Assembly (NCBI RefSeq): GCF_001194135.2
Contig: NC_069007.1
Span: forward strand, 5,958,503-6,003,327
Direction of reading: 5' to 3'
From: Octopus bimaculoides
Lineage: Eukaryota
DNA length: 44,825 bases
This document shows positions 25,316 to 26,945 of the stretch, piece by piece. The position numbers and the translations under genes are program-made. Each line of letters opens with the position of its first letter. Position 1 is the first letter of the stretch. The notes beneath the pieces were generated by a model. That model was not told the DNA's origin, made no database searches, and saw only the letters and a list, made by a program, of their open reading frames with translations.

Positions 25316-25529
25316 GCATTTATGAACCTTTTATTTTTTGAATGAAATATTAAAATTAAAAAATATGAAATTCCGCTAAAATTATAATCAAATTTGACAG
25401 AATTGTCTCTTGTTCTCTTCTTCTCTCGCTCAGTCAAAGGAGATTTTGCACTTTCAGATGGCATGGAGACCTCACTAGTGCTGGTGCTATGCAAAAGAGC
25501 ACCCTGTACATGCATATTGAAAAATGGTT

Positions 25530-25629
25530 GGCGGTACATATTCTAAAATTGGAACGATACAGAGAGGATTAGCATGGCCCCTGCGCAAGGATGACACGTA
25601 AATTTGTGACGCGTTCCATATTTTTTTTT
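25530..25629 (+). pseudogene. U6: U6 snRNA retropseudogene (5' end ~11 nt short)
   Basis: GGCGGTACATATTCTAAAATTGGAACGATACAGAGAGGATTAGCATGGCCCCTGCGCAAGGATGACACGTAAATTTGTGACGCGTTCCATATTTTT differs at about 7 positions from the vertebrate U6 sequence as recalled. ACAGAGA box and AGC triad present. Upstream is repeat DNA, with no PSE/TATA seen. Confidence 0.92.
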
Positions 25630-25633
25630 AATA

Positions 25634-25895
25634 GGCGTAGGAGTGACTGTGTGGTAAGTAGCATGCTTACGAACCACATGGTTCCGGGTTCAGTCCCACT
25701 GCGTGGCACCTTGGGCAAGTATCTTCTACTATAGCCTCGGGCCGACCAAAGCCTTGTGAGTAGATTTGGTAGACAGAAACTGAAAGAAGCCCGTCGTATA
25801 TATNNNNNNNNNNNNNNNNNNNNNNNNNNNNNNNNNNNNNNNNNNNNNNNNNNNNNNNNNNNNNNNNNNNNNNNNNNNNNNNNNNNNNNNNNNNN

Positions 25896-25944
<49 letters not shown>

Positions 25945-26153
25945 ATATGTTTGAGTGTCTGTGTTTGTCCCCACAACATCGCTTTACAACCGATGCTGGT
26001 GTATTTATGTCCCTGTAACTTAGCGGTTCGGCACAAGAGACCGATAGAATAAGTACTAGGTTAACAAAGAATAAATCCTGGGGTCGATTTGCTCGACTAA
26101 TGGCGGTGCTCCAGCATGGCCGCAGTCAAATGACTAAAACAAGTGAAAGAGTA
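25634..26153 (+). mobile_element. SINE family A, full length
   Basis: Starts GGCGTAGGAGTGACTGTGTGGTAAG, ends AAGTGAAAGAGTA. Confidence 0.88.
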
Positions 26154-26945
26154 TTGGGAAAGGCATCAAATGGTAGTAACCATGCCAAAGCAGACATTGT
26201 TGCACGAGGTAGACTTCGAACCTAACGAATCTTGTCATACTGTCCAACCCATGCCAGCATGGAACATAGACATTCAATGATGATGATGATGATGATGGCA
26301 ATGACGATAACAACGGTGAGGATTATGGCAACGATGACAACAATGATTATATTAAACACTGCAAAGAAAGAAAATAGATGAGTCACAACTAGACTCCCCA
26401 TTGATGTATGTACGTCTGTCACAAAGAAGCCATGTATCACATTTACATAACATAACCAACGAAAGCCCAAATAGTTTGTTAATTGTTACAAGTTGCAGGA
26501 AGATCAATTTCCGCAAAGTATTCTTCAGTGTTGCAAATAATTCCATGATTTATTTGAACATATTTTGGAAGTTTCTGGAAGAGAAGTATAATATCATAAT
26601 GAAAGTTGAATGTGTTCAAAGAGATTTCATTTTCTATTGAGCAATTTTTTTTGTTTTTCCTTTTTTACTTTTCTTTGTAAATCATTAGGTTTTACTCTCC
26701 CTGTCACATGTGTTAGATACACACACACACAAACAAACACAGATATTATATATATATATATTTATATATATACATACATACATACATAGTACAAATATAC
26801 TTGCATACATATGTATATATGTATATATACACACACATACATATGCATATATATATATATATATGAATATATGTACATGTGTGTGTGCACGTGTATAAAG
26901 ACACACTCCTACACACACATGCATATGTACAATATATATATCTAC

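What the first reader, a model, noticed from the sequence alone, without database searches (positions are those of the whole stretch)
25460..26295. U6 snRNA-SINE chimeric retrogene inserted at one point in an RTE 3'UTR
Seen: a U6 copy (25530-25629, complete through its 3' U-tract) is followed after only AATA by a full-length family A SINE (25634-26153). The pair splits an older RTE 3'UTR exactly between TGGTTGGC and TTGGGAAAGGCATC. No host bases lie between U6 and the SINE, there is microhomology at the left junction (GGC), and no TSD is visible. Established: U6/L1 and U6/Alu chimeras in mammals form when RT switches or is ligated from the retroelement RNA to U6, giving U6 5' and element 3'. 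Inference: this is the same architecture in a mollusc, probably made by RTE- or Dong-type machinery since no L1 is visible in this window. I know of no cephalopod report, but I have not searched.
Basis: partly seen in the sequence, partly recalled or inferred. Interest (0 to 1): 0.8.

Follow-up and report, generated by a model that had tools for sequence, protein, structure and literature searches.

The report
U6 snRNA–SINE chimeric retrocopy in octopus
A dead, 5'-shortened copy of the U6 spliceosomal RNA is fused head-to-tail to a complete octopus SINE and the pair sits as one insertion inside an older LINE tail. This structure is already known from vertebrates but I found no published report of it in a mollusc.

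Summary
Rfam finds one U6 in the window (25527-25625, 97 bits). It runs through a T9 tract and is followed, after 1-4 bases, by a full-length copy of the window's commonest SINE, ending at 26153.

The two outer flanks are adjacent halves of one old LINE 3' end with an (ATG)n tail. No base is lost or duplicated at the site.

The N gap (25804-25895) lies in the SINE's own internal (TA)n microsatellite and does not touch either junction.

Refinements:
- The U6 is 5'-truncated by 11-15 nt; its 5' stem-loop is absent.
- Three of the four "AATA" bases are most likely the SINE's own 5' end, so the spacer is most likely a single A.
- TSDs are not visible on other copies of this SINE either, so their absence here says nothing.
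- The host element is a LINE tail, but "RTE" is not verified and the SINE's partner LINE is undetermined.

Best reading: one retrotransposition event, in which reverse transcriptase copied the whole SINE RNA and then jumped to the 3' end of U6.

The architecture, including 5'-truncated U6, RTE or SINE partners and no TSD, was described in platypus, opossum and lizard (Doucet 2015). This is a new member of a known kind.

Recurrence across the genome and the orthologous empty site could not be tested with these tools.

The parts
25457..25533 (+).
   Evidence: The joined flanks align across the break to six other window copies. Identity to their consensus is 74%.
25530..25629 (+). U6 snRNA retro-pseudogene, 5'-truncated (U6 nt about 12-16 to the 3' end), ending in T9 (25621-25629). 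25530-25533 (GGCG) is shared with the host LINE sequence as microhomology.
   Evidence: Rfam U6 at 97.2 bits. Upstream is LINE sequence, not a U6 promoter.
25630..25630 (+). Single A between the U-tract and the SINE. Candidates: a non-templated base, a 3'-added base on the U6 RNA, or one base of upstream transcript.
   Evidence: The base at this position before other SINE copies is variable.
25631..26153 (+). Full-length tRNA-like/CORE-like SINE ('family A'). It starts ATAGGCGTAGG... and ends ...GTGAAAGAGTA. Its internal (TA)n/(TG)n microsatellite spans about 25797-25950.
   Evidence: Alignment to other copies. ATA precedes GG in 6 of 7 window heads and 5 of 8 heads in O. bimaculoides and O. 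sinensis loci. Identity to the window consensus is 94-95%.
25804..25895 (.). Assembly gap inside the SINE's (TA)n microsatellite
   Evidence: TA repeats lie on both sides. Other copies carry 20-45 nt of TA/TG at the same place. The same kind of gap is seen in O. bimaculoides locus L002.
26154..26296 (+). Right half of the same LINE 3' end, starting TTGGGAAAGGCATC and ending in the (ATG)n tail (about 26277-26298)

Best explanation
This is a bipartite (chimeric) retrocopy made in a single retrotransposition event.

Proposed steps:
1. A LINE-encoded endonuclease/reverse transcriptase nicked the bottom strand inside an old LINE 3' end, at the position now 26153/26154.
2. It primed on the 3' tail of a SINE-A RNA and copied that RNA to its very 5' end (ATAGG...).
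3. It added zero or one base.
4. It jumped to the 3' end of a U6 snRNA carrying an oligo-U tail.
5. It copied U6 back to about nt 12-16, inside the 5' stem-loop.
6. The cDNA end was joined to the upstream DNA end through GGC(G) microhomology.

The product is a non-functional, 5'-truncated U6 fused to a complete SINE, with no target-site duplication or deletion.

Shown: the anatomy, the single clean footprint, and the similar age of the two halves. Inferred: the order of steps, the template jump, and the enzyme.
For: - U6 identity and its complete 3' U-tract.
- The SINE is complete at both ends, and its 5' end follows the U-tract after a 1-4 nt spacer, most likely 1 nt.
- Both elements are on the same strand.
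- The pair splits the host LINE tail with 0-1 nt ambiguity.
- U6 has no poly(A) and no LINE-type tail of its own. The only 3' end in the composite that a LINE enzyme could prime on is the SINE's.
- U6 is about 93% and the SINE 94-95% identical to their references, against 74% for the host copy. The two arrived at similar times, long after the host element.
- Random adjacency has probability about 0.001 from the local SINE density.
- Precedent in PMC4476161: U6 chimeras with L2, RTE-like LINEs and their SINEs; U6 mostly 5'-truncated with stringent LINEs; small or absent TSDs.
- A partner complete at its 5' end, plus possibly one extra base, fits end-to-end template jumping. It fits less well with the RtcB ligation route, which needs a 5'-OH and in humans gives variably 5'-truncated partners (PMC6789731).
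Against: - There is no TSD to bracket the composite. Other copies of this SINE show none either, so this is uninformative rather than contrary.
- Only one locus was seen. No second U6 occurs in the window or in 81 kb of further Octopus DNA.
- The orthologous site in a sister species could not be examined.
- The responsible LINE is unknown.
- The SINE body crosses an assembly gap.
Confidence: 0.62

Rival explanations
1. A single event, but the two RNAs were joined before reverse transcription. U6 ending in a 2',3'-cyclic phosphate was ligated by an RtcB-type ligase to the SINE RNA, and the fused RNA was then retrotransposed through the SINE tail.
For: This route is demonstrated for human U6/L1 (PMC6789731). 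The final architecture would be identical to what is seen.
Against: Ligation needs a 5'-OH. A SINE that is complete to its first base is more likely a primary pol III transcript with a 5'-triphosphate, which is inference from established knowledge. Human ligation products have variably 5'-truncated partners and 4-8 T. Here the partner is full-length, the tract is T9, and there is possibly one extra A.
Confidence: 0.13
2. Two independent insertions. A solitary U6 retro-pseudogene landed in the LINE tail and a SINE later inserted exactly at its 3' boundary, or the reverse order.
For: SINE-A is very dense here, at about 19 copies in 45 kb. No TSD ties the pair together. Across a whole genome with many U6 copies, a few chance adjacencies are expected.
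Against: The chance of a same-strand SINE 5' end within 5 nt is about 0.001. A solitary U6 with a complete U-tract and no poly(A) or LINE tail has no known priming route. L1-made solitary copies are poly(A)-extended or 3'-truncated, and stringent LINEs make essentially none. No host base is duplicated, lost or left between the two elements. The two halves are of similar divergence.
Confidence: 0.12
3. The composite is a copy of a pre-existing composite source. This would be a master SINE sitting just downstream of a U6 sequence and transcribed through it, or a propagating U6-headed SINE subfamily comparable to SINEU.
For: An automated annotation of O. vulgaris lists one 'SINE/U' family (369 kb in total, 19 recent insertions) and one 'SINE/U-L1' family, both undescribed (PMC13282606).
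Against: No second copy occurs in the window or in 81 kb of extra Octopus DNA. Pol III would terminate at T9. U6 uses an upstream promoter that a 5'-truncated copy cannot carry. The 5' end here is set by microhomology with the target, as in a truncation event, not by a fixed family terminus. The U snRNA behind the 'SINE/U' label is not stated.
Confidence: 0.08
4. Assembly artefact: contigs from different loci were joined through the repeated SINE, or the contig is chimeric.
For: The assembly is gap-rich (14 gaps in 45 kb). An unmerged 327-bp contig overlap lies only 300 bp upstream.
Against: The U6/SINE junction lies within one ungapped stretch. The outer flanks of the two contigs are exactly adjacent parts of one diverged LINE copy, which a false join would not produce.
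Confidence: 0.03

Closest known systems
U6 chimeric retro-pseudogenes with non-L1 partners in vertebrates: platypus U6/L2 and U6/Mon-1, opossum U6/RTE_Mdo and U6/RTESINE1, lizard U6/RTEX-2 and U6/AnolisSINE2 (Doucet et al. 2015, PMC4476161)
   Same: U6 sits 5' and the retroelement 3', in one orientation and directly joined. The U6 3' end is complete. U6 is 5'-truncated when the partner depends on a stringent LINE. TSDs are tiny or absent. The partner can be a SINE.
   Different: The host is a cephalopod mollusc, and those surveys covered only vertebrates. Here the SINE partner is full-length to its first base. The partner LINE is not identified. Only one locus is known.
Human and mouse U6/L1 chimeric pseudogenes (Buzdin 2002/2003, Gilbert 2005 and Garcia-Perez 2007 as cited in PMC4476161; Moldovan 2019, PMC6789731)
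   Same: Same order and orientation. The U6 U-tract is joined to the element with no genomic DNA between them.
   Different: The mammalian cases have full-length U6, a variably 5'-truncated L1, a poly(A) tail, 6-19 bp TSDs and a TTTT/A cleavage site. None of these applies here.
Bipartite and tripartite chimeric retrocopies in Magnaporthe grisea (PMC2104539)
   Same: LINE reverse transcriptase jumps between cellular and SINE RNAs outside mammals.
   Different: The RNAs differ (no U6), the organism is a fungus, and the LINE (MGL/MINE) is different.
SINEU: SINEs with U1/U2 snRNA-derived heads (Kojima 2015, PMC4494074)
   Same: An snRNA sequence sits at the 5' end of a SINE-like unit.
   Different: SINEU are multi-copy families with a fixed snRNA-body junction and are derived from U1 or U2. 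Here there is a single truncated U6 copy with no evidence of propagation.

Membership tests
U6 chimeric retro-pseudogene (template-switch/ligation type) | A recognisable U6 sequence lies 5' of a retroelement on the same strand | tested here: met
   Rfam U6 at 97.2 bits on the + strand. The SINE is on the + strand immediately 3'.
U6 chimeric retro-pseudogene (template-switch/ligation type) | The U6 3' end is complete (U-tract) and joined directly to element sequence, with no genomic DNA between | tested here: met
   T9, then A, then the SINE's own ATAGG.
U6 chimeric retro-pseudogene (template-switch/ligation type) | The 3' partner keeps the 3' tail used for target-primed reverse transcription | tested here: met
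   The SINE ends ...AAGAGTA, exactly as the other copies do.
U6 chimeric retro-pseudogene (template-switch/ligation type) | The composite is bracketed by one TSD or one insertion footprint | tested here: inconclusive
   There is no TSD, but there is a single exact footprint in the host LINE tail. Other copies of this SINE also lack visible TSDs.
U6 chimeric retro-pseudogene (template-switch/ligation type) | Both parts arrive together (orthologous site empty, or occupied by both) | not testable with these tools
   No way to reach the orthologous locus. The fetched Octopus loci are unrelated. Similar divergence of the two parts is only indirect support.
U6 chimeric retro-pseudogene (template-switch/ligation type) | The same junction type recurs at independent loci in the genome | not testable with these tools
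   No U6 in 81 kb of further Octopus DNA. The metagenome collection holds no Octopus DNA: the SINE-only control scan also returned nothing.
Functional U6 snRNA gene | An intact 5' stem-loop and an upstream type-3 pol III promoter (PSE and TATA) | tested here: not met
   The 5' stem is aligned with 6 deletions and 2 non-pairs. The upstream bases are host LINE sequence. There is also an A-to-G change next to the ACAGAGA box.
snRNA-headed SINE family (SINEU-like) | Multiple copies share the same snRNA-body junction and 5' terminus | tested here: inconclusive
   There is no second copy in 45 kb plus 81 kb, but that sample is far too small. 'SINE/U' is listed for O. vulgaris without description.
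RTE-clade LINE (host element and presumed machinery) | RTE-type apurinic-like endonuclease and RT phylogeny, and a short 3' UTR ending in a short tandem repeat | tested here: inconclusive
   An (ATG)n tail is present. One copy (10796-11114, minus strand) is preceded by an ORF fragment matching O. bimaculoides proteins, one of which has a GVHQG RT motif. Pfam gives no clade, and no endonuclease or phylogeny was tested. The similarity between the SINE tail and this tail is not significant.

The most novel reading that the evidence does not exclude
U6-to-SINE/LINE template jumping is a recurrent pathway in cephalopods, driven by a non-L1, stringent-type LINE. It would then extend from vertebrates to protostomes. 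It could also be the source of the undescribed 'SINE/U' families annotated in Octopus vulgaris, meaning that a U6-SINE composite has itself become a propagating element.
Probability: 0.15. Interest if true: 0.6.

Novelty: new member of a known kind. Interest (0 to 1): 0.33.

Why it matters
If it is a genuine single-event chimera, it shows that U6 is picked up by LINE reverse transcriptases in a lophotrochozoan as well as in vertebrates. That would support the view that U6 capture is a general property of non-LTR retrotransposition and not an L1 or mammalian peculiarity.

It would also give a marker for which LINE/SINE pairs were active in octopus lineages, as U6 chimeras have done for mammals.

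As a single dead pseudogene it has no likely function in the host.

Tried and rejected
1. Recurrence test through the protein database. The antisense ORF spanning the SINE head and U6 was searched and gave nothing, because Octopus non-coding ORFs are not in that database.
2. Metagenome pattern scans. The U6-gap-SINE pattern gave 0 hits and a SINE-only control also gave 0. The collection holds no Octopus DNA, so the null is uninformative.
3. Sampling more Octopus DNA through mariner-like annotated proteins. This yielded three loci totalling 81 kb from O. bimaculoides and O. sinensis. They were useful for the SINE termini but contain no U6 and no orthologue of the window. One look-up failed.
4. 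Looking for a host exon in the window to anchor an orthologous locus. Only transposon-derived ORFs were found.
5. TSD search around the composite and around 12 other SINE copies. None was convincing.
6. Partner-LINE inference from shared 3' tails. The CCAGCATGG...AAATGA resemblance between the SINE tail and the host LINE tail is reached by 17-23% of shuffles, so it was rejected. Head-less SINE-tail hits in the extra loci are truncated SINEs or abut gaps, not LINE ends.
7. ARAGORN on the SINE heads found no tRNA call.
8. Pfam on the ORF fragment next to a host-type LINE tail gave no hit.
9. A functional U6 gene was rejected: there is no 5' stem-loop and no promoter.

Full report
**What is there.** Rfam's covariance models find exactly one RNA family in the 44.8-kb window: U6 at 25527-25625 on the + strand, 97.2 bits against a gathering score of 44 (repeated with lax thresholds). 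The sequence runs through the conserved ACAGAGA and AGC regions to ...GTTCCATA followed by nine T (25621-25629).

The model's 5' stem-loop is aligned only with six deleted positions and two non-pairs. The bases placed there, TGGTTGGC, are explained perfectly by the host repeat's consensus. The copy is therefore 5'-truncated by 11-15 nt. The left junction lies within GGCG (25530-25533), which is shared by both sequences.

**The SINE.** BLAST of the downstream sequence against the window finds about 19 copies of one SINE family. A multiple alignment shows the focal copy collinear with the others from the head to the common 3' end ...AAGAGTA at 26153.

All copies carry an internal TA/TG microsatellite. 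The N run 25804-25895 has (TA)n on both sides at exactly that position. The gap therefore most likely hides an expanded microsatellite. No reading frame is involved, and neither junction of interest is affected.

The family's 5' terminus was refined. ATA precedes GG(C/T)GCAGG in 6 of 7 full-length heads in the window. It also does so in 5 of 8 heads, in unrelated flanks, in 81 kb fetched from O. bimaculoides and O. sinensis. The base before ATA is variable. The SINE therefore most likely starts ATAGG at 25631, and only one base (A, 25630) separates it from the U-tract.

**The host site.** Joining 25457-25533 to 26154-26296 gives a sequence that aligns without a gap across the join to six other window copies of a repeat ending in (ATG)n. 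The consensus is ...GAGTGGTTGGC[G/A]TTAGGAAGGGCATCC.... The composite thus splits this repeat exactly, with no duplication and at most one ambiguous base.

This exact complementarity also shows that the contigs on either side of the gap belong to one locus. That matters because the assembly is poor: there are 14 gaps, and a 327-bp exact duplicate flanks the 19-N gap 300 bp upstream.

The repeat is the 3' end of a LINE. One copy (10796-11114, minus strand) is preceded by an ORF fragment whose only homologues are short O. bimaculoides proteins, one of which carries a GVHQG reverse-transcriptase motif. Its clade ('RTE') was not verified: Pfam was silent on the fragment.

**Ages.** The focal SINE is 94-95% identical to a consensus built from the window's copies. 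The U6 part is about 93% identical to canonical U6. The host LINE tail is 74% identical to its consensus. The two inserted parts are of similar age and much younger than the host element.

**Interpretation.** The anatomy is that of a chimeric retrocopy made in one event.
- U6 has its full U-tract but no poly(A) and no LINE-type tail, so the only primable 3' end in the composite is the SINE's.
- The SINE is complete to its first base and follows U6 after one base.
- Both are on one strand, and together they leave a single clean footprint.

The most economical mechanism is target-primed reverse transcription of a SINE RNA to its 5' end, then an end-to-end template jump (with zero or one extra base) to the 3' end of an oligo-uridylated U6. 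Synthesis would have stopped inside the U6 5' stem-loop, and the 5' end would have been joined by microhomology.

Random adjacency of a same-strand SINE 5' end within 5 nt has probability about 0.001 at the local SINE density.

The missing TSD is not informative. I found none around other copies of this SINE in the window or in the other two species.

Ligation of the two RNAs before reverse transcription, as shown for human U6/L1 (PMC6789731), gives the same product and cannot be excluded. However, it requires a 5'-OH partner, and in humans it yields variably truncated partners.

Sequential insertion, a pre-existing composite source and an assembly artefact are less likely, for the reasons given under the rival explanations.

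**Comparison with what is known.** Doucet et al. 2015 (PMC4476161) surveyed vertebrates and found U6 chimeras with several partners:
- platypus L2 and Mon-1, where nearly all U6 copies are 5'-truncated and TSDs are 1-9 bp;
- opossum RTE_Mdo and RTESINE1, with 5'-truncated U6 and no obvious TSD;
- lizard L1, L2, RTEX-2 and AnolisSINE2.

They concluded that template switching to U6 is a general property of non-LTR retrotransposons. The present locus matches the stringent-LINE pattern feature for feature. It differs from the classic mammalian U6/L1 type, which has full-length U6, a truncated L1, poly(A) and long TSDs.

My searches of the held literature found no report of U6 chimeras in cephalopods or other molluscs. 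The library is incomplete, so this is weak negative evidence.

An automated O. vulgaris repeat annotation lists 'SINE/U' and 'SINE/U-L1' families without description (PMC13282606). This is a lead, not evidence. The same paper lists L1 and L1-Tx1 in Octopus, so L1-type enzymes are not absent from the genome, although this SINE has no A-tail.

**What could not be done.** Genome-wide recurrence and the orthologous site are the decisive tests, and neither was reachable. The protein database holds no Octopus non-coding ORFs. The metagenome collection holds no Octopus DNA. The window contains no host exon to anchor a look-up. The 81 kb of extra Octopus DNA contains no U6. The partner LINE remains unidentified, because the apparent tail similarity to the host LINE is not above shuffles.

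**Verdict.** The single-event chimera reading is the best explanation: about 0.75 for one event overall, of which about 0.62 is template jumping. It is a new member, in a new phylum, of a known kind, and is of modest interest unless recurrence or propagation is shown.

Noticed in passing
window 24542-24868 and 24888-25214: A 327-bp stretch is repeated at 100% identity on either side of the 19-N gap at 24869-24887. This is almost certainly an unmerged contig overlap (assembly artefact), not a real tandem duplication.
   Followed up: yes
window 25164-25315 (-) versus 25639-25792 (+): An older copy of the same SINE head (82% identity) lies inverted about 320 bp upstream of the focal SINE head, with the U6 copy between the arms. 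If transcribed, such inverted SINE pairs could form long dsRNA, the usual substrate of A-to-I editing, which is prominent in octopus.
   Followed up: no
window SINE copies, e.g. 25702-25719; consensus: SINE-A carries ACCTTGGGCAAGT..CTT just after its tRNA-like head. It may be a CORE-SINE, possibly related to the OR2 family of Ohshima and Okada 1994 or to the 'tRNA-CORE(-RTE)' classes annotated in O. vulgaris.
   Followed up: partly
window gaps 1906-2375, 5412-6220, 25804-25895, 37101-37206; L002 about 10900-11240: These assembly gaps sit in the (TA)n microsatellite inside or beside SINE-A copies. The same pattern occurs in the O. bimaculoides chromosome assembly GCA_001194135.2. The window probably comes from that assembly or a similar short-read assembly. 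The best protein hits to a LINE fragment are all O. bimaculoides.
   Followed up: partly
window 31736-32092 (+): A Mos1/mariner transposase N-terminal ORF (HTH_48). Its best protein hits are from a bee (Habropoda laboriosa, 84%) and a mite (Dinothrombium, 85%), as high as or higher than the Octopus paralogues (75-82%). Nucleotide copies in O. bimaculoides and O. sinensis are about 90% identical. This is the patchy distribution typical of horizontally transferred mariners.
   Followed up: no
window 37667-38410 (-), 36962-37642 (-), 32043-32333 (-), 1269-1650 (+): Degraded LINE reverse-transcriptase fragments, one interrupted by a SINE-A copy at 37256-37348, and a Tc1/mariner DDE fragment (QQDSAPCH...WPPNSPD). 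Only the 37783-37947 fragment has a database hit, a weak one to RVT_1 (E 7e-6); the others are recognised by motif alone. No host exon was recognised anywhere in the window.
   Followed up: partly
P0123 and relatives (O. bimaculoides); window 11414-11761 (-): The LINE family whose 3' end hosts the insertion appears to carry a PHD-like zinc finger (Pfam PHD, E 1.6e-4) inserted within the RT/C-terminal region of ORF2.
   Followed up: no
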